IMG/VR virus record: IMGVR_UViG_3300010430_000003
Span: 62,001 to 126,000 of that record
Strand: one strand, 5' to 3'
Length of the DNA: 64,000 bases
A program made the translations under genes and the position numbers. A model generated the notes under the pieces. It was not told the origin of the DNA, made no database searches, and was given only the letters and a program-made list of their open reading frames with translations. This document shows, in pieces, positions 1,376-63,008 of this stretch (the first letter of the stretch is position 1; the number at the start of each line of letters is the position of its first letter).

Positions 1376-1421
1376 AAAGCCTCTTGTTGTAGCTATTTAT
1401 TAGTGAATAACAAGAGGCTTT
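1376..1421 (+). promoter_or_regulatory. hairpin with late-promoter-like CTATTTAT in the loop and RBS in the 3' arm
   Basis: AAAGCCTCTTGTT (1376-1388) and AACAAGAGGCTTT (1409-1421) form a perfect inverted repeat; GAGG lies just before the TTG start at 1426. Confidence 0.75.
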
Positions 1422-11203: not shown

Positions 11204-11242
11204 AATAGTATTTATAGGGAATAGTGAAGGAGAACAATATTC

Positions 11243-12000: not shown

Positions 12001-12087
12001 TTTTATAAATTAACAAAAAAGTGTTGTTGGATATTAAAGAATCTATTTAATATGAAAGTTTTTTCATTTTGAATGGAGATTATTTTA

Positions 12088-14955: not shown

Positions 14956-15009
14956 TTAATAAAAGATACTATTTAAAATAGTTAATCTTAATTTTGAGGA
15001 TTTAAATTA

Positions 15010-15570
15010 ATGGCAGACTTCTGGAATTCAGCGGCGTTGGAGCCAAAGCGTAACTTTAAGTTTCAGCTTTATATTAAAGGTGTTCCAACCTATATTATTA
15101 AAGTGGCGGGACGACCCAATTTTAAAGTTGGTGAAACTCCTCATAGGTATCTTGGAAAAGAGTTCTGGTTTCCGGGCACTGTATCATGGGAGCCTGTTAA
15201 TGTTACGCTTGTTGATCCCATTCAGATCAATTCGGTCGCAATCATGAGAGATATTATTGTCCAGTCTGGCTATGATTGGATTAAACCAAATACTCCAATT
15301 AATGCTAACATCTTGAGCACGATTTCGAAGAAGAATGCCGTTGAAGCGATGGGTCTCGTTCATTTGGTCCAGATTGATTCGGATGGAAATACTATTGATA
15401 GTTGGAAGTTGCAGAATGCATGGATTGCAAGCTTTACACCAACAGAACTGAGTTACGATTCGGACGAGCTTTCAGAAGTTCAATTAACACTTAGATATGA
15501 TTGGGCAATTGTTGAGACTCCTTCTGGAACAGGTCTTGATAATGCTCTCGGTAATCTCTCGCCATTCTAA
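15010..15570 (+). CDS. tail tube protein
   Basis: EPKRNFKF, W.PVNVTLVDP, W.LQNAWI, LSYDSDE...LTLRYDWA; follows the sheath gene. Confidence 0.92.
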   Translation: MADFWNSAALEPKRNFKFQLYIKGVPTYIIKVAGRPNFKVGETPHRYLGKEFWFPGTVSWEPVNVTLVDPIQINSVAIMRDIIVQSGYDWIKPNTPINANILSTISKKNAVEAMGLVHLVQIDSDGNTIDSWKLQNAWIASFTPTELSYDSDELSEVQLTLRYDWAIVETPSGTGLDNALGNLSPF

Positions 15571-19382: not shown

Positions 19383-20270
19383 ATGGCTCAAAAATTTAAA
19401 AGCGTTGTAAGAGAAAGAGAAAGAGCTAAACAGTATTATGATAAAACAGATGAGCTTTTTAATGCTGGTCTTATTTTAGAGTTTTATCATATACCATCTG
19501 GCCAATCTGTTTCTTTTAAGGCATATATAACTAATCTAACCGATAATTTTAATCAATCATGGAATTCTGAAAAAGTTATCGGCCGTTCCGATCCGTTTCA
19601 TAACTATGAAAACACAGAGCGAGTCATTAACTTGGGATGGGAGATCATCGCCGCCTCGGATTTTGAAGCTCAGACAAACATGCAAGATATTTCACTGTTA
19701 GCAATGATGAATTATCCCAAATATGATCAAGGGATAGAACAAGCTTTAGCAGGTGTGCAAAGTGCTACCACCATAACTGAATCTCCTTTGTTTCGAGTCA
19801 AGTTAATGAATTTGATTACGTCAACAAAAGAATTAACTGCACAATCAGAAATTGGAAGGGCTAAACTGTCTGGCTTGCCGTGCAGAATTGACGGGTTTTC
19901 CTTTTCTCATGTAGTTGACGATGGGTATTTTTCTCATACAAATGAAAGCTTAACAGTTGATAATTCTGTTAATATTGTCAAGGTATATCCAAAGACAATT
20001 GAAGCCTCTTGTACATTATATGTAACTCATGATCATGCCCTTGGGTGGTCTTCTGAGGGGAAGTTTAGAGGTAGTGAATACTATCCTTATGATGAAGCTG
20101 CCCCGCTATTAGAAGAGTTTGTTGAAATAGAGGAAGATGTTAATAGTATTGATAGTGTATTAAACTCTTTAGATGAATCCATTGAACAAGAAGATACATT
20201 GGTAGAAAAAGCTCTTAAAAATATTGAATTAAACGAATCAATATTTAATTCAATAATGGAGGGAAGTTAA
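19383..20270 (+). CDS. baseplate/tail tube initiator protein
   Basis: FKAYIT...D.F...W....IGRSDP...Y..T.R.I motif. Confidence 0.7.
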   Translation: MAQKFKSVVRERERAKQYYDKTDELFNAGLILEFYHIPSGQSVSFKAYITNLTDNFNQSWNSEKVIGRSDPFHNYENTERVINLGWEIIAASDFEAQTNMQDISLLAMMNYPKYDQGIEQALAGVQSATTITESPLFRVKLMNLITSTKELTAQSEIGRAKLSGLPCRIDGFSFSHVVDDGYFSHTNESLTVDNSVNIVKVYPKTIEASCTLYVTHDHALGWSSEGKFRGSEYYPYDEAAPLLEEFVEIEEDVNSIDSVLNSLDESIEQEDTLVEKALKNIELNESIFNSIMEGS

Positions 20271-20608
20271 TGCCATCAAGATATAATAAAAAACAAACAT
20301 ATATTAATGATGATCCACGATATAAAGATTTTGTTAAAGAGCGCGGGATTAAGAAAGTTAATCAATATGCCTTTACAGATATGACATATCCAACGGCCTT
20401 ACAAATATCCCAGATGTCTGTTGTAAAGCACGTTTGGGGGGTTGGCTCAAAACTTTATAAGATTGCACACGAACATTATAATGATCCTACTTTATGGTGG
20501 ATTATAGCATGGTTCAACAAGAAGCCAACTGAAGCACATTTTGAAATTGGAGATTTGGTTAGTATTCCAATGCCGCTTGAGAAGATATATGAAATCTTGG
20601 ATATATAA
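20270..20608 (+). CDS. LysM-like baseplate wedge protein (gp53-like)
   Basis: LYKIAHEHYNDPTLWWIIAWFN...GD...IP. Confidence 0.8.
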   Translation: MPSRYNKKQTYINDDPRYKDFVKERGIKKVNQYAFTDMTYPTALQISQMSVVKHVWGVGSKLYKIAHEHYNDPTLWWIIAWFNKKPTEAHFEIGDLVSIPMPLEKIYEILDI

Positions 20609-38767: not shown

Positions 38768-39024
38768 CGGAAATCAACCTTCTTATTAATAGACTTTATC
38801 TCGCATCAATTAAGGATATCTATAAATGGGTTTCTCCTGATGGAGCGTTTATTCTTGTTTTTTATGGTCATCTTAATCATAATATGAAAAACATTACAAT
38901 ATCCCAAGAATTATTTGCTGATAGGTTTCCTACTCACTTATTGAAATATATGCTTGAGACTGATCTTAAGCACAGCTTTCATATGCTAACCAACTCTTTA
39001 TTGGATGTAAATGAACACAATTAG
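38764..39024 (+). CDS. hNxxh family, tandem array member 2
   Basis: INLLINRLYLASIKDIYKW. Confidence 0.65.
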   Translation: MTEINLLINRLYLASIKDIYKWVSPDGAFILVFYGHLNHNMKNITISQELFADRFPTHLLKYMLETDLKHSFHMLTNSLLDVNEHN

Positions 39025-39446: not shown

Positions 39447-39660
39447 TTCCGTGGTTAAGACGCATTTTCTAGATTCAATAGAAAATCCATTCAGTTGGTT
39501 TGTGATAAAACCCCCCGGATTTAAGCGAAGATATAAATCCCTAGGGATTTTTCGTACAAGGAATAGCTTTATCATCAGAAAGGCAAGATATTTATTTAGA
39601 ACCTTTAAACCCTATGTTATTGATTCCTTGATTAAACATAAAAACATGGTAGTTCATTGA
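39406..39660 (+). CDS. hNxxh family, tandem array member 5
   Basis: INSVVKTHFLDSIENPFSW; stop overlaps the dnaE start. Confidence 0.6.
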   Translation: MVPEITAERHTYINSVVKTHFLDSIENPFSWFVIKPPGFKRRYKSLGIFRTRNSFIIRKARYLFRTFKPYVIDSLIKHKNMVVH

Positions 39661-42600
39661 AAGAAAAAGATATTAAATTTGTTGGATTGCACCAACATAG
39701 TCACTATAGTGTCTTTGATGGGTTTGGTGCTCCCAACGAAGCAATTGATTTTGCAATTAAAAACGGTTCGAGAGCGCTAGCCCTAACTGATCATGGAACA
39801 ATGGCAGGCTTGGCAGAACAAGTTCTTCATTCTAAAAAATTAGAACGGGAAGGGGTTGATTTTAAACCAATCTATGGCATTGAAGCTTACTATCACCCAT
39901 CCATTAATGATTGGCAAAACCAATACGAAGAGCATAATAGTAAAAGTGGTAAGAAGTCTAAAAAAGATAGAGATGCAGAACAAGGTTCTGTTGTTGTTGA
40001 AGACGAAGACTATGGAGAGGCTCCCGCAGAGGGTCTTAATTTAAATCATCGACGTCACATGGTTCTTTTAGCCAAGAATCAAACAGGATTGAATAATCTG
40101 TTTTCTATGATCTCAAAATCATATACTAGGCCCTATTATTATAGATACCCAAGAATTGATCTGGAACTCCTTAAACAACATCGTGAAGGCATTGTAGCAA
40201 CTTCTGCGTGCATTGGCGGGTTACTAGGGTTAGATTACTTCCTTAATAAAGAAGAAGGTGAGGAGGCTGTTAAGAAAGCCATGAGAGGCACTGTAGAATC
40301 CATGATGGATATTTATGGAAGTGACTTTTATGGTGAACTGCAATGGAATGCTCTTGATGCTCAACATGAGATTAACAAGCATATTATTGATCTACATCAT
40401 GAATATGGATTTGAACTAATATCAACAGCCGACGCACACTTTCCATCACCAGAGCATTGGCGAAACAGAGAGCTTTATAAAAGACTTGGTTGGATTGGTA
40501 AAAAGGATAAAGTATCTGACATTCCTGATTCTATAGAAGATATGGAATATCAATTGTATCCCAAAAACGGGAATCAAATGTGGGAATCATATAAGAAGTA
40601 TTCCGAAAAGTTTGGTCACTCTTATGATGATAAACTTATTCTTGACTCTATTGAGAGAACACACGATATCTCCTTTAACAAGGTCGAAAAGTTCTATCCA
40701 GATAATTCAATCAAGCTTCCCTCATTCATTTCGGATGTTGATGATTATGATGCAGAATTAAGAAAGATTGCCACTCAAGAATTAGTTAAGAGAGGATTAA
40801 GCAACAATAAAGAATATGTTGAACGAGTAGAAAAAGAGTTGGCTGTTATTATCAAGAAAGGATTCTCTAGATATTTCATTACCACAGAAACAATGGTGAA
40901 TATTGCAAGAGAGCTAATGCTTATTGGTGGTGGTCGAGGTTCTGGTGGTGGAAGTCTTGTAGCATATTTATTGGGAATCACAGAAATAGATCCGCTGAGA
41001 TGGAATCTCCAGTTTGAGAGGTTCTTAAGGGAAGATGATGATGCATACCCTGATATCGATGTAGATATTGAAGACCCTATGATTCTAAAAGAGCATCTTG
41101 CTGAATTGTGGGGAGAAGATTCAGTGGCCCCTGTATCAAATTGGGTTACAATGAAATTTAAGTCTGCCATTAAGGATGTTGCGAAGTTGTATGAAGTTCC
41201 TTATGGAGAAGTTAATGATGTCACAACCAAGATGATGGACGAAGCTATACCTAGAGCTAAGGCAGCAGCAGGTCAATCTTCTGGTGTTTATGATCCATCA
41301 TTTGATGAGTGCAAACAATATAGTCCTACATTTGCTGAATTCCTAGAAAAGTATCCAGATCTAGAGCATCCAATTAGATCTATGCAGGGAACAATTAAAT
41401 CCCTCTCTAGACATGCAGGGGGATTGATTGTTGCAGATAATCTAAGCTCTCAAATTCCACTGATAAGATCATCTGATATTATGCAAACCCCTTGGAAGAA
41501 AGATCTATTGGAACCAATGGGTTTTATCAAATTTGATTTGCTTGGCCTTGATACACTCAAAATGTTTCATGAGTGTATAGAAAGAATTTTGCGATTAGAG
41601 AAAGGTATTAAGAAGCCCACTTTCGAACAAATTAGAGGTTGGTATGAAGAAAATCTCTCCCCTGACAATATTAATCTACAGGACTCTAAGGTTTGGGAGG
41701 TCTTCAAAAAAGGTAATTGGCTAGGCACATTTCAATTTACTGGTAATGGTGCACAAAGATTCTGTAAGTCAATCGAGCCAGATGATTTGATTACACTAGC
41801 GATCATTACATCTATCTTTAGACCGGGTCCATTAGAAGCAGGTGTTCATAAAGATTACGTTGAAGCACTCAACAATCCCAACAGCATTCACTACTTGAAT
41901 GATATACATAGAGAGGTTGCTGGTTCAACGCTAGGCTTTCTCGTGTTTCAAGAGCAGATTGCAGAGCTTGCTCACAAGTTGGGGAAAAACATTTCCCTCG
42001 ATGAAGGAAACTATCTCCGAAAACTGCTAACAAAAAGAAACTCAAATAAAGAGAAAGTGGAAGTCTTTAGAGAAAAGTTTGTTGAGGGTTGTCTTGAGAA
42101 AGATATTTCGCAAGATGATGCTGAAGAACTCTTCCGCAAGTTTGAATACTTTTCAGGATATGGTTTTAACAAAAGCCATGCAGTGGCATATGGGATTATT
42201 TCATATCAATGCGCTTATTTGTGGACTTATTATCCTATTTATTGGGCCACGGCATTCTTGGAAACAACAGATAAGAAGAAGTTAGACGGGGCTATTGCAG
42301 AAGTGCGGTCATACGGCATTGAAATTGAAACCCCTAATATCAACAAGTCCTCGAAGAGATGGGAAGTGGGAGAAGATAAAAGATTATACCAACCACTAAC
42401 ATCAATTAATGGAATTGCCGATGCCTTTTATGCACAGGTTGAACCTCACAGGCCATTCTATTCAATCGAAGAAATGCTCTTTCACGAAGAAATGAAGACT
42501 CCTAATAAAAGTGCATTGTCTGCTCTTATTAGAGCACAGGCACTAAATGATTTAATGGATGAAAGGTTTACAGGTCTCAAGCACTTCTGGTCTGCAGTTG

Positions 42601-43064
42601 CGGTAGATAAGCCAAAAACAGAAGAGAAATTACTTGAAAATATTGAGAACCCTGTTTATAGAGAAGAAGGAGACTTCACAAGAGAGGAAAAGATAATACT
42701 TAAGGCAGATCTAACCAAAATGTTTCCACTCAGAGATATTGTCAGCCAGAAGGCAGAGAACATCATGAGGAAATATGATACATACCCAGTATCTGAATGG
42801 CAGGGCATGCAATACAAATATTGGTTCGTGGTTAGAAATTGTATTGAGAAAAAGGACAGACGAAAACGACCCTATTGGATTTTAGAAGTAATGGATTCAT
42901 CATTCAAGATGCAAAAAATTAAGTGTTGGGGTATAAAAGCACAAGAGGATATGATTATGAAAAATCGTCTATATGTAGCTGATCACATTGAATATGATGA
43001 GAAGTGGGGTTATTCGACAGGATGGAAGAATCCACCAAGGAAAAATTTCAAGTTGGTATCATGA
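39657..43064 (+). CDS. dnaE: DNA polymerase III alpha subunit
   Basis: PHP domain (LHQHSHYS..DG, LTDHG), GRGSGGGSL, PDIDVD, RHAGG, KFDLLGL, GFNKSHAVAY. Confidence 0.97.
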   Translation: MKEKDIKFVGLHQHSHYSVFDGFGAPNEAIDFAIKNGSRALALTDHGTMAGLAEQVLHSKKLEREGVDFKPIYGIEAYYHPSINDWQNQYEEHNSKSGKKSKKDRDAEQGSVVVEDEDYGEAPAEGLNLNHRRHMVLLAKNQTGLNNLFSMISKSYTRPYYYRYPRIDLELLKQHREGIVATSACIGGLLGLDYFLNKEEGEEAVKKAMRGTVESMMDIYGSDFYGELQWNALDAQHEINKHIIDLHHEYGFELISTADAHFPSPEHWRNRELYKRLGWIGKKDKVSDIPDSIEDMEYQLYPKNGNQMWESYKKYSEKFGHSYDDKLILDSIERTHDISFNKVEKFYPDNSIKLPSFISDVDDYDAELRKIATQELVKRGLSNNKEYVERVEKELAVIIKKGFSRYFITTETMVNIARELMLIGGGRGSGGGSLVAYLLGITEIDPLRWNLQFERFLREDDDAYPDIDVDIEDPMILKEHLAELWGEDSVAPVSNWVTMKFKSAIKDVAKLYEVPYGEVNDVTTKMMDEAIPRAKAAAGQSSGVYDPSFDECKQYSPTFAEFLEKYPDLEHPIRSMQGTIKSLSRHAGGLIVADNLSSQIPLIRSSDIMQTPWKKDLLEPMGFIKFDLLGLDTLKMFHECIERILRLEKGIKKPTFEQIRGWYEENLSPDNINLQDSKVWEVFKKGNWLGTFQFTGNGAQRFCKSIEPDDLITLAIITSIFRPGPLEAGVHKDYVEALNNPNSIHYLNDIHREVAGSTLGFLVFQEQIAELAHKLGKNISLDEGNYLRKLLTKRNSNKEKVEVFREKFVEGCLEKDISQDDAEELFRKFEYFSGYGFNKSHAVAYGIISYQCAYLWTYYPIYWATAFLETTDKKKLDGAIAEVRSYGIEIETPNINKSSKRWEVGEDKRLYQPLTSINGIADAFYAQVEPHRPFYSIEEMLFHEEMKTPNKSALSALIRAQALNDLMDERFTGLKHFWSAVAVDKPKTEEKLLENIENPVYREEGDFTREEKIILKADLTKMFPLRDIVSQKAENIMRKYDTYPVSEWQGMQYKYWFVVRNCIEKKDRRKRPYWILEVMDSSFKMQKIKCWGIKAQEDMIMKNRLYVADHIEYDEKWGYSTGWKNPPRKNFKLVS

Positions 43065-45623: not shown

Positions 45624-45693
45624 AAGTTACTTTTGCACAGTGTTTTCCTAATTACTATGTAATCTTTGACTTTTATAAGTGGAGAAATATTTT

Positions 45694-46389
45694 ATGAAGA
45701 AGAAGCCTATTTTAGAAGAGTCCGTAACTCGGCGCATGATGAAGATGGCAGGGATCAGTAAACTTTCTGATAACTTCTTGACCGAATCAGAAGACCTTGA
45801 AGAGACTGAAGAGTTGGAAGAGACTGATGACCTTGAAGAGTCTGATTCCTTAGAAGAGGAAGAGGAGTCTCTTGAAGAGATGGAGAAAGTCGATCATTCT
45901 CACCCCGACCACAAAATGTCAAATAGTGTTGGTAAAGGTCCCGGCCCCGGTGGTCACACCCTTAAGAATGCTCCTGCCTCAAAACGCAATCATCTTGAGG
46001 AAGGTATGCCGCCTATGGAAGAGCCTACCGATGACCTCGGTATGGAAGATCCTGCAGCGGGTATGGATATGGCACCCGAAGAGCCTATGCTTGATGATGA
46101 GCCTGCCACTGTCGAGGGTTTAATTGACGCGATTGTTTCTGCAATCGAAGTAGAAGCCCCCGGATATCTTGAAGTAGCCTCGGAAGAGCCTATGGATATG
46201 GAAGCTCCCATGGATGCTCCTGATGATATGCCAATGGATGACGAAATTCCTGATGATATGGCAGAGGCTGGTCCTCGCCTTAAGGGAGCAACGCGAGAAG
46301 TTCCAATGGAAGAGTCTTACGACGAGAAAATTAACGAGATGGCAGCCTATATTGCCAGAAGCGTTACAGAGCGACTCAAGTCTAAATAA
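45694..46389 (+). CDS. acidic low-complexity protein, probably prohead core/internal protein
   Basis: RRMMKMAGI, repeated LEE motifs, CTAATTA late motif and GGAG upstream, terminator-like hairpin downstream. Confidence 0.6.
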   Translation: MKKKPILEESVTRRMMKMAGISKLSDNFLTESEDLEETEELEETDDLEESDSLEEEEESLEEMEKVDHSHPDHKMSNSVGKGPGPGGHTLKNAPASKRNHLEEGMPPMEEPTDDLGMEDPAAGMDMAPEEPMLDDEPATVEGLIDAIVSAIEVEAPGYLEVASEEPMDMEAPMDAPDDMPMDDEIPDDMAEAGPRLKGATREVPMEESYDEKINEMAAYIARSVTERLKSK

Positions 46390-46428: not shown

Positions 46429-46475
46429 ACCCACCCCGCCTCTCATATTGACGCGTTCTCAGGGTGGGTGTTTTT
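46429..46475 (+). terminator. possible terminator
   Basis: ACCCACCC...GGGTGGGT followed by GTTTTT; unusually long loop. Confidence 0.5.
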
Positions 46476-46517
46476 GTTTCAAAAATCTGTACTAAAAATC
46501 AAAAAATATTTAACAGC

Positions 46518-46545
46518 TTGAAAGTCTCTCACTTTTAGCAATAAT
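46518..46545 (+). promoter_or_regulatory. sigma70-like early promoter
   Basis: A-tract + TTGAAA-N16-AATAAT. Confidence 0.55.
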
Positions 46546-46576
46546 ATCGCTCGGCAAAAATCTAATAAGGAGCGAC

Positions 46577-48175
46577 ATGATTAGCAAAAAAGAGATGGAG
46601 TTTTGGATCGAAAACGATCTTAACGTTCTGTTTAAGGGTCGTCATGGTGTTGGCAAAACATCCATGATTATTGATGCTTTCGAGAAGGCAGGTCTTAAAT
46701 GGAAGTATTTTTCAGCATCTACCATGGACCCATGGGTTGATTTCATTGGAATCCCCAAAGAGAGAGTGGAAAGTGATGGCAGTTCTCATCTAGAACTTGT
46801 AAGACCAAAAGAGTTTTCAAATGACGATGTTGAGGCTCTGTTCTTTGACGAGTATAATCGCGCTCCAAAGAAAGTTCGCAACGCTGTTATGGAACTCATT
46901 CAATTTAAATCAATTAATGGGAAAAAGTTTAACAACCTCAAAATTGTGTGGGCTGCTGTTAATCCTGATGATGACGAAGATGAAGTTTATGATGTTGAAG
47001 TATTAGACCCCGCACAACTTGATAGATTTCAAGTCCATGTTGATATTCCATATAAACCGCAATATTCATACTTTGCAGATAAATACGGATCAGCAATCGC
47101 TAAGAAAGCCATCGAGTGGTGGAAATCCCAGTCTGCAGAGACTCAAAAGGATGTATCTCCCCGACGACTAGATTATCTTGTTGATATCTATGAGAAGGGT
47201 GGTAAGGTTGATTATGTCCTGCCAAAAAGCGCAAACAAAAAGTATTTCCATGAATTGATGGGGTCAGTTCAACTTGAGAAAGAGTATGAAAAGCTTAAGT
47301 CTTCCTCTGAAGAAGAAAAGAAAGCCCTGCTCTCCGAAGAGGGTTTTTATGCACGAATGCACCCATATTTGGAACAAGAGAATTATCTTGAAAAGTTTTT
47401 GAGATTCTATCCACAAGAGAAAATCGGCGTGTTGGCTTCTTCTGACAAGAACATTCTTTCTCTCTTGTTGGAACATGAAGCCACTGTTGATGCATATAAA
47501 GAAGTATTAAGCGGAATGGTTGAGGCTGATTTGAATCAAGATACTGCTAAGTTTATTACTACCGCAAGAGACAAAGGTCTCGAAGAGGCCAAAAAAGACT
47601 TAATGAGAGGTAGCTTCTTTAACTATGTTCTTACTAAAGAATGGTGGAAAAATAATAATCTCGTTAAGACTTGGGATGTTGAGAGCACAGAAGCGCATTT
47701 CAAGAAAAGAGAATCCGACGACTTTCAGCGTACAATGAATTGGGTAACCACCTATACTAGCGGATATATGCAACAATATACTGATGATAGGATTCTTATT
47801 AAGCGCTCTGAAAACACAAATGGGCGCAGGTCATGTCTCGAAAATGCTGCGATATATTTTTATCCCAATCAAACTCATGACAGTTTGAAAGCAACACTTA
47901 ACATGATTAGTAACTATCTCGTTGCTTCGCAAGCAAATACGATCAAAGAAGACATGAACTCATATACTTATAAACATACTCCGTTCATCTTCAACTATTG
48001 CATTGAAATTCTTGAGAAGGAAGATCCCACTTATTTTGATAATCTCCAAAATGCGAATCTTCCTTGGAACCATTCTCTCATGCCCTTTAAGGTTCTACTT
48101 GAAAGGTTAAATAAAAAGCAAAATATCTATAACGTTATGCGCAACTTTGGCTTTGGGTTAGTGAAAAAGACATGA
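46577..48175 (+). CDS. MoxR/AAA_5-type ATPase
   Basis: GRHGVGKT, FFDEYNRA, AAVNP, LDPAQLDRF, SPRRL. Confidence 0.9.
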   Translation: MISKKEMEFWIENDLNVLFKGRHGVGKTSMIIDAFEKAGLKWKYFSASTMDPWVDFIGIPKERVESDGSSHLELVRPKEFSNDDVEALFFDEYNRAPKKVRNAVMELIQFKSINGKKFNNLKIVWAAVNPDDDEDEVYDVEVLDPAQLDRFQVHVDIPYKPQYSYFADKYGSAIAKKAIEWWKSQSAETQKDVSPRRLDYLVDIYEKGGKVDYVLPKSANKKYFHELMGSVQLEKEYEKLKSSSEEEKKALLSEEGFYARMHPYLEQENYLEKFLRFYPQEKIGVLASSDKNILSLLLEHEATVDAYKEVLSGMVEADLNQDTAKFITTARDKGLEEAKKDLMRGSFFNYVLTKEWWKNNNLVKTWDVESTEAHFKKRESDDFQRTMNWVTTYTSGYMQQYTDDRILIKRSENTNGRRSCLENAAIYFYPNQTHDSLKATLNMISNYLVASQANTIKEDMNSYTYKHTPFIFNYCIEILEKEDPTYFDNLQNANLPWNHSLMPFKVLLERLNKKQNIYNVMRNFGFGLVKKT

Positions 48176-49467
48176 AAGAATATTGGGAAATAGCCTCTCT
48201 CTTGGAGAATCATAATGTTCTGTTTTCAGAATTTTGGGAAATGGGGGAACCTGTTTTTACAGATGAAATTGAAACAGCGGCAGTATGTTGGAATAAAGAA
48301 GGTCAAAGAATAAACTATCTTTTTAACGAGACGTTTTGGAACTCTTTGAATGCCTATCAAAAAAGCTTCGTTATCTCTCATGAAATTCTTCATGTGTTGT
48401 TCAAACACGGGAACCGTCTAAAGAGTATTATCGGAGACGCTCAAAGAATGCATATTGCAAATATTGCTGCTGATATCATTGTAAATGAATTTCTCTTTCA
48501 GAAGTTTAGATTCCAACCCCTTTTTATGGGAGACTTATATGATAAGTTAATAACTGAAAAGGGAGTCTTTGGGGAAAAAGGTGAATCTATCTTAACCTTT
48601 GAAAGATATTATGCTAAACTAATGAAAGAGGGTGATGAGTGCGAAGGAAAACAATCATTAGATGATCATGAAGTTAGTTTTGGAGATTCTGGTGAGGGAG
48701 ATGGCGGTTCTTCTTATGATGAAGGCAAAGAAGAAATCCCGGACATTGTCATTGAAGATATCATTGAACAAGCGATTGAGAAGTATGATGAGAAAACAGC
48801 TAAAGAAATGAAGAAGTTGTACACTTCTCAAGAATTTAGCGATGCTATGGGTCAAGTGGCTGGTTCAATGGCCGGTAATTGTGTCAAGACAATCCAGAAG
48901 TTTGCTAAGGTTCGTAAACAAAAGTGGATAACTTTAGTTAAGGATTGGACTCGTCGAAAAATTAAAGAGTCTGTTAATGAAACATGGATTTGGCCCAACC
49001 GTCGGTTAACTCTTTTTGAAGGTGGTGATTTCTTCTTACCCGCAGAATACATTGAAGAGAAAGAAGAGAAAGACAAAGTGAATGTGTGGTTGTTTATGGA
49101 TACAAGCGGCTCTTGTGTCTCTTTTGCTAAGAGATTCTTTAAGGCGGCAGAGTTTATCCCTGATGATTATTTCAATGTTAGATTGTTTTGTTTTGACACA
49201 AGAACATATGAAACAAACTTAGAATCAAGACAACTTTATGGATTTGGTGGCACAAGATTCAATATTATTGAGACCAGAATCCAACAAGAAATGAAGGTGT
49301 TGAAAACAAAGAAATATCCTGATTCTGTTTGGATATTGACAGACGGGTGGGGAAACGATGTCAAGCCTGAGAAACCTGAAAGGTGGAAATGGTTTATGAC
49401 TGATTATCATTCAACCAAGAATATACCCAAACAATCAGAGGTATATAAACTGTCTGATTACGAGTAA
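48172..49467 (+). CDS. metallopeptidase + VWA-like protein (DUF2201-like)
   Basis: ISHEILH, NIAADI, MIDAS DTSGS, GGT, LTDG. Confidence 0.88.
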   Translation: MKEYWEIASLLENHNVLFSEFWEMGEPVFTDEIETAAVCWNKEGQRINYLFNETFWNSLNAYQKSFVISHEILHVLFKHGNRLKSIIGDAQRMHIANIAADIIVNEFLFQKFRFQPLFMGDLYDKLITEKGVFGEKGESILTFERYYAKLMKEGDECEGKQSLDDHEVSFGDSGEGDGGSSYDEGKEEIPDIVIEDIIEQAIEKYDEKTAKEMKKLYTSQEFSDAMGQVAGSMAGNCVKTIQKFAKVRKQKWITLVKDWTRRKIKESVNETWIWPNRRLTLFEGGDFFLPAEYIEEKEEKDKVNVWLFMDTSGSCVSFAKRFFKAAEFIPDDYFNVRLFCFDTRTYETNLESRQLYGFGGTRFNIIETRIQQEMKVLKTKKYPDSVWILTDGWGNDVKPEKPERWKWFMTDYHSTKNIPKQSEVYKLSDYE

Positions 49468-49472
49468 AAAAC

Positions 49473-49512
49473 CGACCCTTCGTGCTATTTAATGTGATAA
49501 CACGGAGGGTCG
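49473..49512 (+). promoter_or_regulatory. RBS-sequestering hairpin with late-promoter-like CTATTTAA in the loop
   Basis: CGACCCTTCGTG / CACGGAGGGTCG 12-bp stem (one G-U) covers GGAGG. Confidence 0.8.
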
Positions 49513-49514
49513 TT

Positions 49515-50159
49515 ATGTTTAGATTATTTGATTTTATTTTACAATTTATCAAGCCCTTAAGGGTTGGATTAGAAGCAGCAGAAATTTCTGTTCCTGAAAA
49601 ACTTGCAAGAATCGCCGAAAAAGAATGGGAAAGAAACATTGAGGAAAAAACACATCAGATCAACCTTGAAATTACAGCCATGTTTGACAATAATGGATGG
49701 GGAAGCTGGCTGCGCTCTGTTGATGGTGGAGGTTGCCCTAACGGGTATCTAAGACCCCCAGACCCCGATTGGTGCGGACAAGCAGTTGCCCATTATGTTT
49801 TAAAGATGAGTCCTTCCCCAAATAAGAAAATGGCAAGAAAAGTGTTGGTCTCAACCTATAGACTCAATCAAAAGGATAAATGGTTACAGTGTGATGTTAG
49901 TTTTCCTTTGGTTGAAGATAGTGGTGATATACAAAGAGGCGACATCGTTGTAGTTCGTTGGGAAAATGGTAAAGAGTATGGAGATCACATTACTTTAGCT
50001 GTATCCGATCTAAAAGAAGATGGTACTTTTGACACAATTGAAGGAAATGCGAAAGGGGAGTTGCCAAATGGAAGTGGTAGAGGACTTGTTAAGCAGAATA
50101 GAAAAAAAGACCAAGTCGCAAGAGTGTATAGACTTACAAAAGAACACTTTAATCAATAA
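49515..50159 (+). CDS. CHAP-domain peptidoglycan hydrolase (putative endolysin)
   Basis: DWCG, GDIVV, DHITL, TIEGN; true start probably ATG 49515 after GGAGG. Confidence 0.8.
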   Translation: MFRLFDFILQFIKPLRVGLEAAEISVPEKLARIAEKEWERNIEEKTHQINLEITAMFDNNGWGSWLRSVDGGGCPNGYLRPPDPDWCGQAVAHYVLKMSPSPNKKMARKVLVSTYRLNQKDKWLQCDVSFPLVEDSGDIQRGDIVVVRWENGKEYGDHITLAVSDLKEDGTFDTIEGNAKGELPNGSGRGLVKQNRKKDQVARVYRLTKEHFNQ

Positions 50160-50322
50160 GATGGTTGTTGCCTATTTCTTAAATATGTATTCTCATTATA
50201 CAACAATGTATATTAGAGCTAACATTAGAAGAAATAATCCAAGATTTTCTAGAAGAACTAGAGCAATATTCTCGTATGAACACCATGACTTAATGATTAG
50301 CGACATGGATAGACATTTTTAA
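50146..50322 (+). CDS. hNxxh family module, start codon uncertain
   Basis: TLINKMVVAYFLNMY overlaps the CHAP stop; no start codon immediately before the motif. Confidence 0.4.
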   Translation, partial: TLINKMVVAYFLNMYSHYTTMYIRANIRRNNPRFSRRTRAIFSYEHHDLMISDMDRHF

Positions 50323-50334
50323 GAGGTTTATAAT

Positions 50335-51936
50335 TTGAATTGGAATGACAAAAAAATTGAGAAAGCAATAAATGTATTGCATGAAAGCGTTACTGTGGCA
50401 CAAGCCTGTAACGAAATCTCAGATTTGTTAGGCGATGATGTTACTCCTGACTCGCTAAGAAAAGCATTTCAAAGAAATGGTTATAATAGCCCTTCTAATT
50501 ATCTCACAGCAATTTCACCTGAAGAGTTATACGAAGAGTTATTCGATGAAGAATTAGAAGAAGAGGTTGATGAAGAGTTATATGATGAATACGAAGCAGA
50601 TGGAGATTATCACTATAATGAAATGACTGATCTTTATCTTGTGTATGTTCCTCACAAAAGAAAACCAATGCAAATTCCCGGTAAATTAATGAGGGAGTGG
50701 AATGAGGCATATTCAAATATGTCAGTTGGTGGTGCTGAAACCATCAACCAAATTTGTAAGACATGGAACATTTCTAGGAAAGACTTCGTCTCTATTAAGA
50801 AGGCTATGAGATGGACTCATGATCAAGACCCCTTTACTGATGAGGAGCACTTAACGAGTGATCCTGCTGATCTCGCTGAGAATCTTGTTCAAAAGAAGCG
50901 CCTTGCTTTTGAAAAACATTTCAGAAAAAAGGAATGGAAGGAGATTGAGAAAGACGCCATTAATTGGAGAGAGCTTTCTTACCATCTAGGAGCAACACCA
51001 AATCTTAAAGCAGTTAAGGAGACCATCGATGATATTAAAAATATTGAACGGTATTGTCAAAATATATCGATTGATAAGAAAGTTTCTAAAAAGGAAATAA
51101 AGGCTAAAAAGGGTAGCACCCTAATCATTCCAATTTCTGACCTTCATGTTGGCAAGAAGTTTACTACAAAGAGTGTGAAACATAAAAACTTTAATCTGTC
51201 TGAATTGAAGAAGAGACTGGCTAGGGCAATGGGATACATTACCATGGCTAAACCACAATTTGAAGACAGAGTGTCTCATATTGTCTATTCATCCCTTGGT
51301 GATAACTTTGAAGCTATCTTTGGGAATATGCGACCCGGCCAACACTTAACAATGGATCTGTTTGGCGCTGACCAATATAAAGAAGTGGTTGAATTTCATG
51401 TTGAGCTTATCTCTTTCATTAGAGAGGAGTTTCCAGATGTAACTATCACAGCAGTATTTCAAGGTGGTAATCATGATAGGATTTTTGGAGCTAAGCAGTG
51501 GGATTCAGAAGAAGTTCTAAACTATATAATGACAGATAGAATTGCTGCTGAATTTAAGGATGTGCCTGCAAAAGATCTTGAGGTTTTAGTTGGTGAGCCT
51601 GTGTCTTCTATTACTATGCCAAATGGTGTAAATTTAATTACACAACACGGTCACCTTAAGGGTTTGAAGAATCACAAGGATATCGCAAACTTCATTAATA
51701 TGCACGGAGACAAAAAAGCCCCTCGGTATTTGATTTCGCAAGGTCACTTTCATCATTGGGAAACAATCTCTGGCTTTAACTATAAGTTCTATATGAACTC
51801 ATCGTTCTGCGGAAACGATTCATATAATCTAGAGAAGATTGGGGTAGGTTCTCCCGCCGAATTCATGATGGTTGAATCTGCCGTTAATAACGACATATTC
51901 TATGGACCATATAATCTTGAAGAAGATGTTTTTTGA
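50335..51936 (+). CDS. calcineurin-like metallophosphoesterase with an N-terminal HTH-like region
   Basis: SDLHVG, LGD, GNHD, HGH, GHFH. Confidence 0.85.
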   Translation: MNWNDKKIEKAINVLHESVTVAQACNEISDLLGDDVTPDSLRKAFQRNGYNSPSNYLTAISPEELYEELFDEELEEEVDEELYDEYEADGDYHYNEMTDLYLVYVPHKRKPMQIPGKLMREWNEAYSNMSVGGAETINQICKTWNISRKDFVSIKKAMRWTHDQDPFTDEEHLTSDPADLAENLVQKKRLAFEKHFRKKEWKEIEKDAINWRELSYHLGATPNLKAVKETIDDIKNIERYCQNISIDKKVSKKEIKAKKGSTLIIPISDLHVGKKFTTKSVKHKNFNLSELKKRLARAMGYITMAKPQFEDRVSHIVYSSLGDNFEAIFGNMRPGQHLTMDLFGADQYKEVVEFHVELISFIREEFPDVTITAVFQGGNHDRIFGAKQWDSEEVLNYIMTDRIAAEFKDVPAKDLEVLVGEPVSSITMPNGVNLITQHGHLKGLKNHKDIANFINMHGDKKAPRYLISQGHFHHWETISGFNYKFYMNSSFCGNDSYNLEKIGVGSPAEFMMVESAVNNDIFYGPYNLEEDVF

Positions 51937-52127: not shown

Positions 52128-52375
52128 ATTTAAACATAATGATAGCAAGAGGTATCATTCATGATAAAACCAAGAACTTGTTGGGCTCCGATCCGTTAAG
52201 CTTTGAACTGAGAACATCGCTGCACACCGCAAGGAGAATAAGAAGTATCAAGGATGGTTGGGAGGTTAGCAACCCTTTTCCTTTATTGATCGCCTTGGAA
52301 GAAATAGATGAAACTGGACTCTTGAAAGTAAGCATAACAACTTTTATTGATAGAAGGCTATATGAAGAAATATAA
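52124..52375 (+). CDS. small ORF of the hNxxh family
   Basis: MNLNIMIARGII; ATGA overlap. Confidence 0.6.
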   Translation: MNLNIMIARGIIHDKTKNLLGSDPLSFELRTSLHTARRIRSIKDGWEVSNPFPLLIALEEIDETGLLKVSITTFIDRRLYEEI

Positions 52376-53969
52376 AACAGGAAATGAATTACTATTATCT
52401 CTCTTGGAAGGTTCGAGGAAGCTTGAGGAGAATGTCGCTTGCACTCTTGGACCGAGAGGCAACAATGTCATTTTAAGACCCTTGGGTAGTAATCCAATTA
52501 TCACTAAGGATGGTGTTACTGTTGCTAAGTTCACTGATCTTGAGGATGAGATTGAAGACTTGGCTTGTCAAATTCTTAAACAAGCTTCAATTGAAACAGT
52601 TAAAGAAGCTGGAGACGGAACAACAACCTCCACAGTTTTGGCGAATGCTATATTTACAGAGTCCTCTAAGTATATTCTTAGCGGGGTTACTCCTATCTCT
52701 CTTAAGCGAGGGATGGATAAAGCGGTCCGGAGAATCAATTGCGAGATTGAAAAGAGAGCAACTCCGATATCAACAAAAGAAGATATAAAGAGTATTGCAA
52801 CAATATCATCTAATAACGATGCAGATATTGGTGATTTAATTGCTAATGCTGTGGATGGTATTGGCCGTGATGGTTCTATTGTGGTGGAAGATGGAAAGAG
52901 CACCCAAACAGTTCTTGAGTTTGTTGAAGGTTTAAGGCTACAGGGTGGTTTTCAATCACATCATTTTGCCAATGATAATATTAGAAATGTTGTATCATAC
53001 AAGGATCCTTATTTTCTGATTACAGACCATGTAATTGATGATTTGGAAGAACAACTGCTTCCCGTACTTCAACTTGTACTAAGAGATAAAAAGCCTCTAA
53101 TCATTATTGCTGATGGTTATGGCGAAGAAGTAAGTGCTGCTTGTATCTACAACGCTCTTCAGTCTAGAAAGAATTTGAATAACGCTGTAAAAGTAGCTTG
53201 CTTAAAGGCTCCATCTTTTGGAGAAGAGAGAACTAAGGTTCTTGAGGATGTTGCTATTTCTGTGGGAGCTAAGTTCTTCAGTATGTTTGCTGGTGATAAT
53301 ATTGCTGATGCTAAATTAATTGATTTGGGGGGTGCTGAAAAGCTTGAGGCTAATGGTTACTTCACAACTATTATTGGCGGTATGGGTGAACCAGAAAGGA
53401 TTGAAGAAAGGATTGATGCTCTAAAGGAAGAAATTGATAACGCCCCCGTTAACGAAGGGGCTAGAATTCAAGAAAGAATTACACGGCTTGGCTCTGTTGT
53501 TGCTATCATTAAGGTTGGTGGTCACACTGATGTAGAAGTCGGTGAGATTAAAGATAGAGTTAATGACGCGCTTGAAGCCGTCAATTCAGCTAGGATTGAA
53601 GGGGTGGTAGCAGGAGGAGGTAGCACTCTTCTTAATATTGCTCTTAGGCTCGAAGAAGAAAGATATGAAGAGTCTGATCTCTTTAATGAAGAAGAAAAGA
53701 TAGGGGTGAGAATTTTATTAGAGAGCATTAAGTCTCCGTTTAAAAGAATCGCTCTTAACTCTGGTTTTTCATGGGAGGTTCTAGTAAATAAAGTCAAAGA
53801 GCAAGAAGGAGAAATGGGTGTAGATTTCGTCACAGGAGAGCTTAAAGACTTAAAGGAAGAGGGAATTATTGACCCCGCTAAAGTCACTAGAGTTGCTCTG
53901 CAAAACGCGATATCAGCAGCCTCAACACTTATTACAACAAATAATGCTATTGTCGAAATTCCTCACTAA
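52362..53969 (+). CDS. groEL: chaperonin GroEL-like protein
   Basis: TLGPRG, ITKDGVTVA, AGDGTTTSTVLA, GVVAGGG, IIDPAKV. Confidence 0.96.
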   Translation: MKKYKTGNELLLSLLEGSRKLEENVACTLGPRGNNVILRPLGSNPIITKDGVTVAKFTDLEDEIEDLACQILKQASIETVKEAGDGTTTSTVLANAIFTESSKYILSGVTPISLKRGMDKAVRRINCEIEKRATPISTKEDIKSIATISSNNDADIGDLIANAVDGIGRDGSIVVEDGKSTQTVLEFVEGLRLQGGFQSHHFANDNIRNVVSYKDPYFLITDHVIDDLEEQLLPVLQLVLRDKKPLIIIADGYGEEVSAACIYNALQSRKNLNNAVKVACLKAPSFGEERTKVLEDVAISVGAKFFSMFAGDNIADAKLIDLGGAEKLEANGYFTTIIGGMGEPERIEERIDALKEEIDNAPVNEGARIQERITRLGSVVAIIKVGGHTDVEVGEIKDRVNDALEAVNSARIEGVVAGGGSTLLNIALRLEEERYEESDLFNEEEKIGVRILLESIKSPFKRIALNSGFSWEVLVNKVKEQEGEMGVDFVTGELKDLKEEGIIDPAKVTRVALQNAISAASTLITTNNAIVEIPH

Positions 53970-62571: not shown

Positions 62572-62805
62572 ATGATGGAAGAAAAAAACAAAAGAGATCT
62601 TAAGAGAATTAGAGAAAAAGCTCTTAGAGATAGAGAAGTAGAAAAGGGTGTGCATGATGGGCGTATGTATACCAAAGTCCATAAAGTCAGAAAAGACAAG
62701 AACATTAACTATGAAGACGAAATGGATGAGTATTTTTGGGAAGAAGAGGAAATAGAAGAGCCTTCCGACGAAGAAGAAATTGAAGCATCACCTTGGAGAC
62801 GATAA
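62572..62805 (+). CDS. small basic/acidic hypothetical protein
   Basis: Basic N-half, acidic C-half. Confidence 0.55.
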   Translation: MMEEKNKRDLKRIREKALRDREVEKGVHDGRMYTKVHKVRKDKNINYEDEMDEYFWEEEEIEEPSDEEEIEASPWRR

Positions 62806-63008
62806 TGGATTCGTATATTAATATATTGATTCATTATCGTTTTTATGGAGACCTCCCAATGATACCTGAATTGCTGTATCAAAACTTTGAAATGGAACAA
62901 TATTCATCATCTATGTCTTCCTTTAATGAAAGCGAATATAAAGAAGACAACATATATTATGATTATGATCTTAACGGTTTAACTACATTACTGGAGACCA
63001 ATGCCTAG
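62805..63008 (+). CDS. small ORF of the hNxxh family
   Basis: MDSYINILIHYRFY; GGAG RBS; TAATG overlap. Confidence 0.6.
   Translation: MDSYINILIHYRFYGDLPMIPELLYQNFEMEQYSSSMSSFNESEYKEDNIYYDYDLNGLTTLLETNA

What the first reader, a model, noticed from the sequence alone, without database searches (positions are those of the whole stretch)
49473..49517. Endolysin RBS locked in a hairpin whose loop holds a late promoter
A 12-bp stem (CGACCCTTCGTG/CACGGAGGGTCG) buries the GGAGG RBS of the CHAP gene, and its 16-nt loop starts with CTATTTAA, the motif found before structural genes. Read-through from the early promoter at 46518 would be translationally silent. A late transcript starting in the loop would lack the 5' arm and be translatable. 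The same logic is established for T4 gene e (lysozyme) and soc; here it appears with a different promoter motif. It also corrects the start codon to 49515.
Basis: partly seen in the sequence, partly recalled or inferred. Interest (0 to 1): 0.6.

Follow-up and report, generated by a model that had tools for sequence, protein, structure and literature searches.

The report
Late promoter inside RBS-masking hairpin
A giant T4-like phage from marine sediment buries the ribosome-binding site of its cell-wall-cutting enzyme gene in an RNA hairpin whose loop carries the phage's late-gene promoter motif, so the enzyme is probably made only late in infection; this is the trick T4 uses for its lysozyme, rebuilt here from different sequences.

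Summary
The hairpin is real: 12 pairs (one G.U), 49473-49484 with 49501-49512, and a 16-nt loop that starts with CTATTTAA. GGAGG lies in the 3' arm and the ATG is at 49515 (-24 kcal/mol, z -6.8). It is the second most stable simple hairpin on the + strand of this 210-kb phage genome.

CTATTTA is the most enriched 7-mer upstream of genes. It precedes the terminase, prohead protease, neck, sheath, tube and baseplate genes. Its variant CTA[T/A/C]TTA lies 23-41 nt before the gp13-like gene in all 55 distinct relatives, often just after a terminator. The genome also encodes a gp55-like late sigma.

Relatives keep the hairpin. In an 85%-identical relative, four of the 12 pairs change, one of them on both sides, and all still pair, while the loop is unchanged. 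In a 65%-identical relative, an unrelated stem encloses a 16-nt loop that again starts with CTATTTAA.

Two more genes in this genome carry the same module, also with compensatory changes in relatives. A conserved sigma-70-like promoter at 46518 can read into the gene.

Transcript starts, timing and lytic activity are untested. I class it as a new member of a known kind.

The parts
46429..46479 (+). Terminator-like hairpin (ACCCACCC / GGGTGGGT, about 25-nt loop) followed by a T-run. It closes the preceding transcription unit.
   Evidence: Read from the sequence. L012 has a different hairpin plus T-run at the same place.
46518..46547 (+). Sigma-70-like promoter (TTGAAA, 16-18 nt, AATAAT/TAATAT) in front of the MoxR-like/DUF2201 operon. 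It is the likely source of read-through into the CHAP gene.
   Evidence: Consensus scan, 10 of 12 matches. Both hexamers and the A-rich upstream block are identical in L012 while the spacer differs. Activity not tested.
46577..48175 (+). MoxR-like AAA ATPase gene.
   Evidence: phrog_1297 ATPase E 2e-15; weak Pfam AAA_3.
48172..49467 (+). DUF2201_N (putative metallopeptidase) gene. Its stop codon lies 5 nt before the hairpin.
   Evidence: PF13203 E 6.6e-12. The gene order is kept in L012, L014 and the contig of P0003.
49473..49484 (+). 5' arm of the hairpin (anti-SD arm). It is present only in transcripts that start upstream.
   Evidence: Pairing-preserving substitutions in L012.
49485..49500 (+). 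16-nt loop. Its first 8 nt, CTATTTAA (49485-49492), are the late-gene promoter-like motif.
   Evidence: The loop is 16/16 identical in L012, where neighbouring genes are 76-82% identical at the DNA level. In L014 only the CTATTTAA part is fully kept. Motif enrichment.
49501..49512 (+). 3' arm of the hairpin. It holds the Shine-Dalgarno GGAGG (49504-49508), 6 nt before the ATG.
49515..50159 (+). Gene for a 214-aa CHAP-type cysteine peptidase/amidase, a probable endolysin.
   Evidence: Pfam CHAP 18-20 bits, below the 26-bit cut-off. phrog_21825 endolysin E 3e-4. Cys87, His158 and Glu176-Gly-Asn178 are invariant in 6 homologues. 27 of the 30 nearest ESM Atlas clusters share the set of Pfam families led by CHAP, top score 0.96. 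No Phage_lysozyme, Amidase_2 or SLT match elsewhere in the genome.
50161..50322 (+). Small conserved ORF (53 aa) directly after the CHAP gene. Function unknown.
   Evidence: In-frame counterparts ending RHY in L012 and L014. No PHROG hit.
1376..1421 (+). Second module of the same design: 15-bp stem and 16-nt loop with CTATTTAT (1393-1400). AAGAGG lies in the 3' arm, followed by a T-run and the TTG start at 1426 of the gp13-like neck protein gene (1426-2703).
   Evidence: -26.9 kcal/mol, z -7.3; the most stable simple hairpin in the genome. In L099 the inner stem is replaced by other paired bases. L098 keeps the outer 9 bp. L100 has an unrelated stem around CTAATTA. PF26809 Phage_T4_gp13.
12043..12050 (+). 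CTATTTAA motif without an enclosing strong hairpin, 45 nt before the tail sheath gene (12088-14955).
14969..14976 (+). CTATTTAA motif 41 nt before the tail tube gene (15010-15570).
11208..11215 (+). Motif variant GTATTTAT, 35 nt before a head protein gene (11243-11620).
20241..20248 (+). Motif variant ATATTTAA, 29 nt before a baseplate wedge gene (20270-20608).

Best explanation
This is a T4 gene e-type two-transcript switch. The CHAP peptidase gene sits at the end of an operon (MoxR-like ATPase, DUF2201 protein) that a sigma-70-like promoter at 46518 can transcribe. In those long RNAs, 49473-49484 pairs with 49501-49512 and locks the Shine-Dalgarno GGAGG in a 12-bp helix of about -24 kcal/mol, so 30S subunits cannot bind and the peptidase is not made.

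The 16-nt loop starts with CTATTTAA, the phage's late-promoter element. This element is of the -10 type and is presumably read by host core RNA polymerase carrying the phage's gp55-like sigma. A transcript started by it begins near 49497-49501, lacks the whole 5' arm, and has a free ribosome-binding site. The wall-degrading enzyme is therefore translated only late.

The same module insulates at least two other genes of this genome: the gp13-like neck protein and a 177-aa protein. There it is followed by a T-run and probably also terminates upstream transcription.

Shown: the structure, its significance, its conservation with compensatory changes, the motif's association with late genes, and the geometry. 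Inferred: promoter activity, start site, timing, translational block, and lytic function.
For: Structure:
- -24.2 kcal/mol, z -6.8. It is more stable than T4 e's own hairpin, which folds at -14.9.
- It is the second most stable simple hairpin in 210 kb. The first has the same design.

Conservation of the CHAP hairpin:
- L012 (85% protein identity) has 5 substitutions in the 24 stem bases. Pair 1 goes C-G to U-A, pair 8 U.G to C-G, pair 9 C-G to U.G, and pair 10 G-C to G.U.
- All 12 pairs are kept and the loop has 0 changes, although neighbouring genes are 76-82% identical.
- L014 (65%) has an unrelated stem (7 bp, a bulge, 4 bp). Its 16-nt loop again starts with CTATTTAA, the SD is in the 3' arm, and no T-run follows.

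Motif as late promoter:
- It is the top upstream 7-mer.
- It precedes the terminase, prohead protease, head protein, gp13-like, sheath, tube and baseplate wedge genes.
- CTA[T/A/C]TTA is present 23-41 nt before the start codon in 55 of 55 distinct gp13-like upstream regions at 52-84% protein identity. In 16 of these it follows a terminator-like hairpin within 12 nt, where only a promoter makes sense.
- A gp55-like sigma is encoded at genome 209187-209630 (phrog_234, E 5e-8 and 9e-7).
- The more distant CHAP homologue in L016 has a canonical terminator followed by CTATTTAT before the gene.

Recurrence:
- The hairpin at genome 38977-39010 is kept in L102 through wobble changes and in L103 through U-A to C-G.
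- The gp13 hairpins are described.

Read-through:
- The sigma-70-like promoter is conserved.
- No stable hairpin lies between it and 49473.

Other points:
- The predicted late leader (49497-49560) has no significant structure (z -0.5).
- Precedent: T4 e, soc, 49 and I-TevI (PMC3014915, PMC2988022).
- The T4 e fold shows TATAAATA in the loop and the SD in the 3' arm.
Against: - There is no transcript data of any kind. Only DNA runs hold the phage, and their contigs show no variants.
- The motif's promoter function and the start site are inferred by analogy.
- L014's fold is not significant against shuffles on its own (z -1.7).
- L015 (59%) shows no such hairpin or motif in the 75 nt available.
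- The upstream stop codon is only 5 nt from the stem, so a terminating ribosome could open it and allow coupling. T4 e has a 1-nt gap and is still repressed, so this is not decisive.
- In the other two modules the upstream genes look late as well, so early/late logic cannot be their whole purpose.
- The window hairpin is followed by UUAUGUUU, a weak U-tract, so partial termination is possible.
- The CHAP assignment is below Pfam's threshold, and no holin was identified beside the gene.
Confidence: 0.65

Rival explanations
1. The hairpin is first of all an intrinsic terminator or insulator at a transcription-unit boundary. It stops the MoxR/DUF2201 transcript, and the promoter in its loop restarts transcription. 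Masking of the RBS is a by-product of reusing the SD as the 3' arm.
For: - The two sister modules are followed by runs of 4-7 T that relatives keep.
- In many relatives a canonical terminator sits directly before the same motif, so a terminator-promoter junction is the ancestral layout.
- The window and L012 hairpins are followed by TTATGTTT.
Against: - L014 keeps the hairpin but has AGAAGCAT after it, with no U-tract.
- A 16-nt loop is well outside the 3-8 nt of the genome's own canonical terminators, which have loops of 3-4 nt, and the terminator scan did not call it.
- In all examples the 3' arm covers the SD, which a pure terminator does not need.
- The two roles are not exclusive.
Confidence: 0.15
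2. The hairpin regulates translation on a single class of transcript. Either it couples CHAP translation to termination of the DUF2201 gene, because the ribosome at the stop codon melts the stem. Or the AU-rich loop motif is an RNA cleavage or protein-binding site whose use frees the RBS.
For: - The stop codon lies 5 nt (window, L012) to 9 nt (L014) before the stem.
- The loop motif is single-stranded and A/U-rich, like endonuclease sites.
Against: - The same motif stands before many late genes with no hairpin, and directly after terminators where no upstream RNA would exist.
- T4 e has the same stop-to-stem geometry (1 nt) and is repressed about 100-fold (PMC3014915).
- The motif is strictly oriented and sits 23-45 nt before start codons, as a promoter would.
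Confidence: 0.1
3. The inverted repeat acts in DNA. An extruded hairpin or cruciform presents the -10-like element single-stranded to the late polymerase, making this a structure-dependent promoter.
For: - The 16-nt loop recurs in this genome, about the size of a transcription bubble.
- The motif's offset within the loop varies (0, 2, 4 nt), so a fixed start-to-stem distance does not explain the constant length.
Against: - Most motif sites have no inverted repeat.
- The stems hold G.U pairs that would be A.C mismatches on the other strand, and the + strand RNA is always the more stable one.
- Substitutions in L012 and L102 run through wobble pairs, as expected for RNA.
- Loops in relatives are 14 nt to about 33 nt.
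Confidence: 0.04

Closest known systems
Bacteriophage T4 gene e (lysozyme) translational control (McPheeters et al. 1986, from my own knowledge; reviewed in PMC3014915)
   Same: - A lysis-type enzyme gene lies downstream of earlier-class transcription.
- The SD is in the 3' arm of a hairpin.
- A -10-only late promoter lies in the loop, and in T4 also in the 5' arm, so late RNA lacks the 5' arm.
- The upstream gene's stop codon sits just before the stem.
- The phage is T4-like and has a gp55-like sigma.
   Different: - The promoter word is CTATTTAA, not TATAAATA.
- The stem is longer and stronger (12 bp, -24 against -15 kcal/mol), and the loop is 16 nt against 8.
- The enzyme is a CHAP peptidase, not a glycoside hydrolase.
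- The phage is only about 30-37% identical to cultured relatives in the terminase and gp13-like proteins.
- According to PMC3014915, even Aeh1, 44RR, 25 and 31 lack the structure at e, so this is most likely an independent build.
T4 soc, gene 49, I-TevI/II/III and segB, and Aeh1 mobE hairpins (PMC3014915, PMC2988022)
   Same: The same logic is applied to non-lysis genes. A late promoter is placed so that late RNA cannot form the RBS-sequestering helix. This matches the gp13-like and 177-aa gene modules here.
   Different: The genes served here are a neck protein and an unknown protein. Their modules carry a T-run and sit behind genes that look late, so termination or insulation is probably part of the role.
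Terminator-then-late-promoter junctions in the same uncultured marine clade
   Same: The same motif at the same distance to the start codon, and the same job of making a gene depend on its own promoter.
   Different: There the terminator (short loop, T-run) lies wholly upstream of the motif and does not involve the SD. Here the promoter sits inside the loop and the SD forms the 3' arm.
Phage N4 virion RNA polymerase hairpin promoters (from my own knowledge)
   Same: A promoter associated with an inverted repeat.
   Different: N4 promoters are DNA hairpins with a 5-7 bp stem and a 3-nt loop, read by a single-subunit polymerase. Here the loop is 16 nt, the motif works without a stem elsewhere, and the substitutions point to an RNA helix.

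Membership tests
T4 e-type two-transcript translational switch | The SD and/or start codon is paired in a stable helix in upstream-initiated RNA. | tested here: met
   GGAGG 49504-49508 lies inside a 12-bp stem; -24.2 kcal/mol, z -6.8.
T4 e-type two-transcript translational switch | A late promoter is placed within or after the 5' arm, so late RNA lacks that arm. | tested here: inconclusive
   The placement of the late-gene motif is met: it occupies loop positions 1-8, and the 5' arm lies wholly upstream. Promoter activity and the start site cannot be tested here.
T4 e-type two-transcript translational switch | The gene is reached by transcription of an earlier class with no terminator in between. 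| tested here: inconclusive
   A conserved sigma-70-like promoter lies at 46518, and no stable hairpin lies between it and 49473. The temporal class is not known.
T4 e-type two-transcript translational switch | The helix is maintained by selection (compensatory change). | tested here: met
   In L012, 4 changed pairs are all kept, one by a change on both sides. L014 has a new stem with the same layout. The sister modules covary.
T4 e-type two-transcript translational switch | T4-type late transcription apparatus (gp55-family sigma, -10-only promoters). | tested here: met
   phrog_234 'late sigma transcription factor' is the only PHROG hit of ORF L011:1480-2196 (E 9e-7, and 5e-8 in the genome scan). 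BLAST with T4 gp55 itself found nothing. gp33 and the clamp were not searched.
T4 e-type two-transcript translational switch | The protein is made late only, and long RNA is untranslatable. | not testable with these tools
   No RNA runs hold the phage.
Intrinsic (Rho-independent) terminator | G+C-rich stem with a short loop (about 3-8 nt). | tested here: not met
   The stem is G+C-rich but the loop is 16 nt. The terminator scan did not call it.
Intrinsic (Rho-independent) terminator | A U-tract directly after the stem, conserved in relatives. | tested here: inconclusive
   UUAUGUUU in the window and L012, and none in L014. The sister modules do have T5-T7.
CHAP-domain endolysin | CHAP fold with catalytic Cys and His. 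| tested here: inconclusive
   - Pfam gives 18-20 bits against a 26-bit cut-off.
- Cys87, His158 and E176-G-N178 are invariant.
- 27 of the 30 nearest Atlas clusters share the set of Pfam families led by CHAP.
- The AF2 model is poor (pLDDT 56).
- A PDB profile search found no hit.
CHAP-domain endolysin | Lysis role: lytic activity, holin or spanin partners. | not testable with these tools
   No other wall hydrolase of three common families is present in the genome. The neighbouring 53-aa ORF has no obvious membrane segment.
N4-type hairpin promoter | Short DNA hairpin (5-7 bp stem, 3-nt loop) required for recognition. | tested here: not met
   The loop is 16 nt, and the motif occurs without a stem at most sites.

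The most novel reading that the evidence does not exclude
The recurrent 16-nt loop is not an accident of RNA design. It occurs in the three most stable + strand hairpins of this genome plus a fourth, and in L012, L014, L024 and L066. On this reading the stem-loop also forms in DNA and presents the late -10-like element pre-melted, in a bubble-sized loop, to the gp55-like polymerase. One 45-nt element would then be a structure-dependent late promoter, a block to upstream transcripts, and an RBS mask all at once.
Probability: 0.06. Interest if true: 0.85.

Novelty: new member of a known kind. Interest (0 to 1): 0.45.

Why it matters
- It extends the T4 gene e paradigm, hitherto documented only in T-even phages and a few close kin (PMC3014915), to a very distant, uncultured marine T4-like lineage. 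That lineage uses another promoter word and another class of wall hydrolase, which argues for convergent re-invention of the design.
- It gives a testable late-promoter consensus, CTA[T/A/C]TTA about 29 nt before the start codon, for a clade with thousands of metagenomic members and no cultured one. This should help operon and timing annotation of such genomes.
- It flags the CHAP gene as the likely late lysis enzyme of this phage.
- It corrects the gene's start to 49515.

Tried and rejected
- **Relatives of the CHAP and DUF2201 genes:** DNA and protein searches of the public phage collection and IMG/VR found none, or only very distant ones. The metagenome scan returned only the same phage.
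- **Population variants:** four DNA runs laid on 48200-50800 gave only identical low-depth contig pieces, so there is no natural covariation data. No RNA run holds the phage.
- **Whole-window count of CTATTTAA:** 3 against 5.1 expected, so it is not enriched. I replaced this test with position-specific tests.
- **BLAST of T4 gp55 against the genome:** no hit. The PHROG profile was needed.
- **AlphaFold model of the CHAP protein:** pLDDT 56, too poor for a fold search, so none was run. A PDB sequence-profile search gave no hit.
- **Rfam:** only a chance-level match, RsaJ at 18 bits against a 100-bit cut-off.
- **Literature search for the motif:** nothing relevant.
- **Structure-aware alignment for pair counting:** MAFFT put L014 in a different register, so pairs were tabulated by script and by eye instead.
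- **Chance as an explanation:** rejected on the z-scores, the recurrence and the covariation.

Full report
**Context**

The window is bases 62001-126000 of a 210,326-bp virus record with a 123-bp terminal overlap and about 37% G+C. Near-identical DNA occurs only in marine-sediment metagenome runs.

The genome carries T4-type virion genes:
- a T4-type large terminase, a gp21-type prohead protease, tail sheath and a gp19-like tube;
- a gp13-like neck protein, and gp23 in close relatives;
- a protein whose only PHROG match is the gp55 'late sigma transcription factor' family.

Its closest cultured relatives are only about 30-37% identical in the terminase and gp13-like proteins. Around the finding lie a DnaE-type polymerase, a GMP-reductase-like gene, a MoxR-like ATPase, a DUF2201 protein, the CHAP gene, an SbcD-like exonuclease and a GroEL. 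This is a replication and metabolism neighbourhood, not a lysis or structural cassette.

**The observation**

The hairpin is exactly as described.
- The arms are 49473-49484 and 49501-49512, with 12 pairs of which one is U.G.
- The 16-nt loop is 49485-49500 and begins with CTATTTAA.
- GGAGG is at 49504-49508 inside the 3' arm, and the ATG is at 49515.
- The fold is -24.2 kcal/mol, z -6.8, with 0 of 200 shuffles as good. In a wider context z is -5.1.

In a scan of the whole genome for uninterrupted stems of at least 9 bp, it is the second most stable on the + strand. The most stable one (window 1376-1421) has the same design. No Rfam family matches.

**The motif**

CTATTTAA as a plain word is not over-represented in the window (3 against 5.1 expected), but its placement is far from random.
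- CTATTTA is the most enriched 7-mer in the 80 nt before genes (11 against 1.5 expected), ahead of every Shine-Dalgarno word.
- Sites of the form nTATTTA[A/T], 29-47 nt before start codons, precede the terminase, the prohead protease, a head protein, the gp13-like protein, the sheath, the tube and a baseplate wedge subunit.
- The gp13-like protein has thousands of metagenomic homologues. In 80 IMG/VR loci plus three closer contigs there are 55 distinct upstream regions. Every one has CTA[T/A/C]TTA (C 53/55; T, A, T, T, A invariant) 23-41 nt before the start, median 29.
- In 16 of these regions a terminator-like hairpin ends within 12 nt before the motif. RNA from upstream should be scarce there, which fits a promoter far better than an RNA signal.

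Together with the gp55-like sigma, this makes a T4-style, -10-only late promoter the best reading. I found no paper describing this word.

**Conservation of the CHAP hairpin**

A word-based protein search found five homologues at 85, 73, 65, 59 and 48% identity. DNA was available for four of them. The order MoxR, DUF2201, CHAP, exonuclease, GroEL is kept in L012, L014 and the contig of P0003.

- **L012 (85%).** The stem has five substitutions in 24 bases: pair 1 C-G to U-A, pair 8 U.G to C-G, pair 9 C-G to U.G, and pair 10 G-C to G.U. All 12 pairs survive. The 16-nt loop has no change, although the neighbouring genes are only 76-82% identical in DNA. The fold is -21.4 kcal/mol, z -6.0.
- **L014 (65%).** The stem sequence is unrelated (TCTCCCT-AGAA with TTCT-G-AGGGAGA). 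Yet it encloses a 16-nt loop that again begins with CTATTTAA, the SD is again in the 3' arm, and the rest of the loop differs at 5 of 8 positions. This fold alone is not significant against shuffles (z -1.7), and no U-tract follows it.
- **L015 (59%).** Only 75 nt of upstream sequence are available, and they show neither motif nor hairpin.
- **L016 (48%, different neighbours).** A canonical terminator is followed at once by CTATTTAT. A plausible SD and ATG lie about 55 nt further on. This is another way to make the gene depend on its own late promoter.

So pairing, rather than sequence, is conserved in the stem, and the conserved part of the loop is the motif shared with other late genes.

**The module recurs**

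- **Window 1376-1421.** A 15-bp stem and a 16-nt loop with CTATTTAT, with AAGAGG in the 3' arm, a T-run and then the TTG start of the gp13-like gene (-26.9 kcal/mol, z -7.3). In L099 (81%) the inner stem is replaced by different bases that still pair, giving 16 bp (z -7.1). L098 (84%) keeps the outer 9 bp only (z -3.4). L100 (65%) has an unrelated 12-13-bp stem around CTAATTA.
- **Across the 55 distinct gp13-like upstream regions.** A significant pairing between the sequence before the motif and the SD region (z below -2) is seen in 9. The design is therefore recurrent but not universal.
- **Genome 38977-39010.** A 9-bp stem and a 16-nt loop with CTATTTAA, with AGAGGA in the 3' arm, T5, then the ATG of a 177-aa protein. 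It is kept in L102 through two wobble changes and in L103 through a U-A to C-G change on both sides.
- **Weaker versions.** These occur at the prohead protease gene and at the sheath gene. At the sheath gene the motif itself pairs with the SD region.

**Read-through**

Before the MoxR-like gene there is a hairpin plus T-run (46429-46479). It is followed by TTGAAA, 16-18 nt, AATAAT/TAATAT at 46518-46547. In L012 both hexamers and an A-rich upstream block are identical while the spacer differs, which is the usual signature of a sigma-70-type promoter. No stable hairpin lies between it and 49473, and the DUF2201 stop is 5 nt before the stem. Transcripts from 46518 should therefore enter the CHAP gene with the hairpin intact. 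That this promoter is 'early' is an inference.

**Mechanism**

The 5' arm lies entirely upstream of the motif. Any RNA that the motif initiates must therefore lack it, whatever the exact start site. With a T4-like spacing the start would fall near 49497-49501, 3-7 nt before the SD. The predicted late leader has no significant structure (z -0.5).

T4 gene e, folded from the T4 record, has the same anatomy: TATAAATA in the loop and in the 5' arm, AGGAGG in the 3' arm, and the upstream stop 1 nt before the stem, at -14.9 kcal/mol. The review PMC3014915 reports about 100-fold repression of lysozyme synthesis from the long RNA. It lists e, soc, 49 and I-TevI as examples. PMC2988022 adds I-TevII/III, segB and Aeh1 mobE.

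I put 0.65 on the same switch operating here.

**Rivals**

- **Terminator or insulator as the main role (0.15).** This fits the two sister modules, which have T-runs and follow genes that look late. It fits the CHAP hairpin less well, because of the 16-nt loop, the weak U-tract, and the absence of a U-tract in L014. The two roles can coexist.
- **Translational coupling, or an RNA processing or binding site in the loop (0.10).** This is disfavoured by the motif's occurrence without hairpins and after terminators.
- **A DNA-level structure (0.04).** This is disfavoured by the G.U pairs and by the wobble route of substitutions. It would, however, explain the odd constancy of the 16-nt loop in this genome.

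**The gene product**

The CHAP call is below Pfam's threshold, but three lines support it:
- invariant Cys87 (PDPDWCG), His158 and Glu176-Gly-Asn178;
- 27 of the 30 nearest Atlas clusters sharing the set of Pfam families led by CHAP;
- a weak endolysin PHROG match.

No Phage_lysozyme, Amidase_2 or SLT domain was found elsewhere in the genome. 'Probable endolysin' is reasonable but untested. The start at 49515 is supported by the aligned N-termini and by a stop codon in L014's upstream frame.

**Verdict**

It is a new member of a known kind, the T4 e-type switch, probably built independently in an uncultured lineage with a different late-promoter word. Interest is moderate. The by-product, a clade-wide late-promoter consensus and a family of promoter-in-loop modules, may be the more useful result.

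Noticed in passing
L018-L100, upstream of the gp13-like gene; window 1393-1400: The word CTA[T/A/C]TTA is present 23-41 nt before the start codon in all 55 distinct upstream regions of gp13-like genes from marine and other metagenomes. In 16 of them it comes directly after a terminator-like hairpin. It is a candidate late-promoter consensus for a large uncultured T4-like clade.
   Followed up: yes
window 62794-62845: This is the third most stable + strand hairpin of the genome: an 18-bp stem and again a 16-nt loop (CGTATATTAATATATT). Its 5' arm holds GGAGA and an ATG at 62805 that overlaps the stop of ORF 62572-62805. A second TGGAGAC and an in-frame ATG at 62859 follow the 3' arm. It may be a switch between two starts.
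   Followed up: partly
window 50161-50322; L012 about 4650-4810; L014 1973-2188: A small ORF (53 aa) directly after the CHAP gene is conserved in frame in two relatives (C-termini RHF/RHY). It has no family match and no obvious membrane segment. It is absent from the contig of P0003, which has only a 36-nt gap there.
   Followed up: partly
window 1426; L098 10001; L099 4582: The gp13-like neck protein gene starts with TTG in this phage and in its two closest relatives with DNA available.
   Followed up: partly
window 12040-12090: At the tail sheath gene the motif CTATTTAA itself pairs with the SD region (TTGAATGGAG), at -13.5 kcal/mol. This variant resembles the distal late promoter in the 5' arm of T4 e.
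   Followed up: partly
window 45648-45654; L012 133-139: CTAATTA lies inside a conserved inverted repeat (ATAAAAGT / ACTTTTAT) just before the SD of the 236-aa ORF region 45679-46389. This is a possible further module in front of an unannotated gene, and a terminator-like hairpin follows that gene.
   Followed up: no
L016 3975-4070: In the 48% CHAP homologue a canonical terminator is followed by CTATTTAT only 1 nt before the annotated ATG. The real start may be the in-frame ATG about 21 codons downstream, which has an AAGAGA SD.
   Followed up: partly
L098 2455-2673: A close relative encodes a ribosomal protein S21 homologue (PF01165) between the prohead protease and capsid genes. I did not check whether the window's genome has one.
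   Followed up: no
window 39657-43064, 52347-53969, 46577-49467: The gene mix is unusual for a phage with T4-type virion genes: a DnaE-type Pol III alpha, a GroEL, and a MoxR-like ATPase paired with a DUF2201 protein.
   Followed up: no
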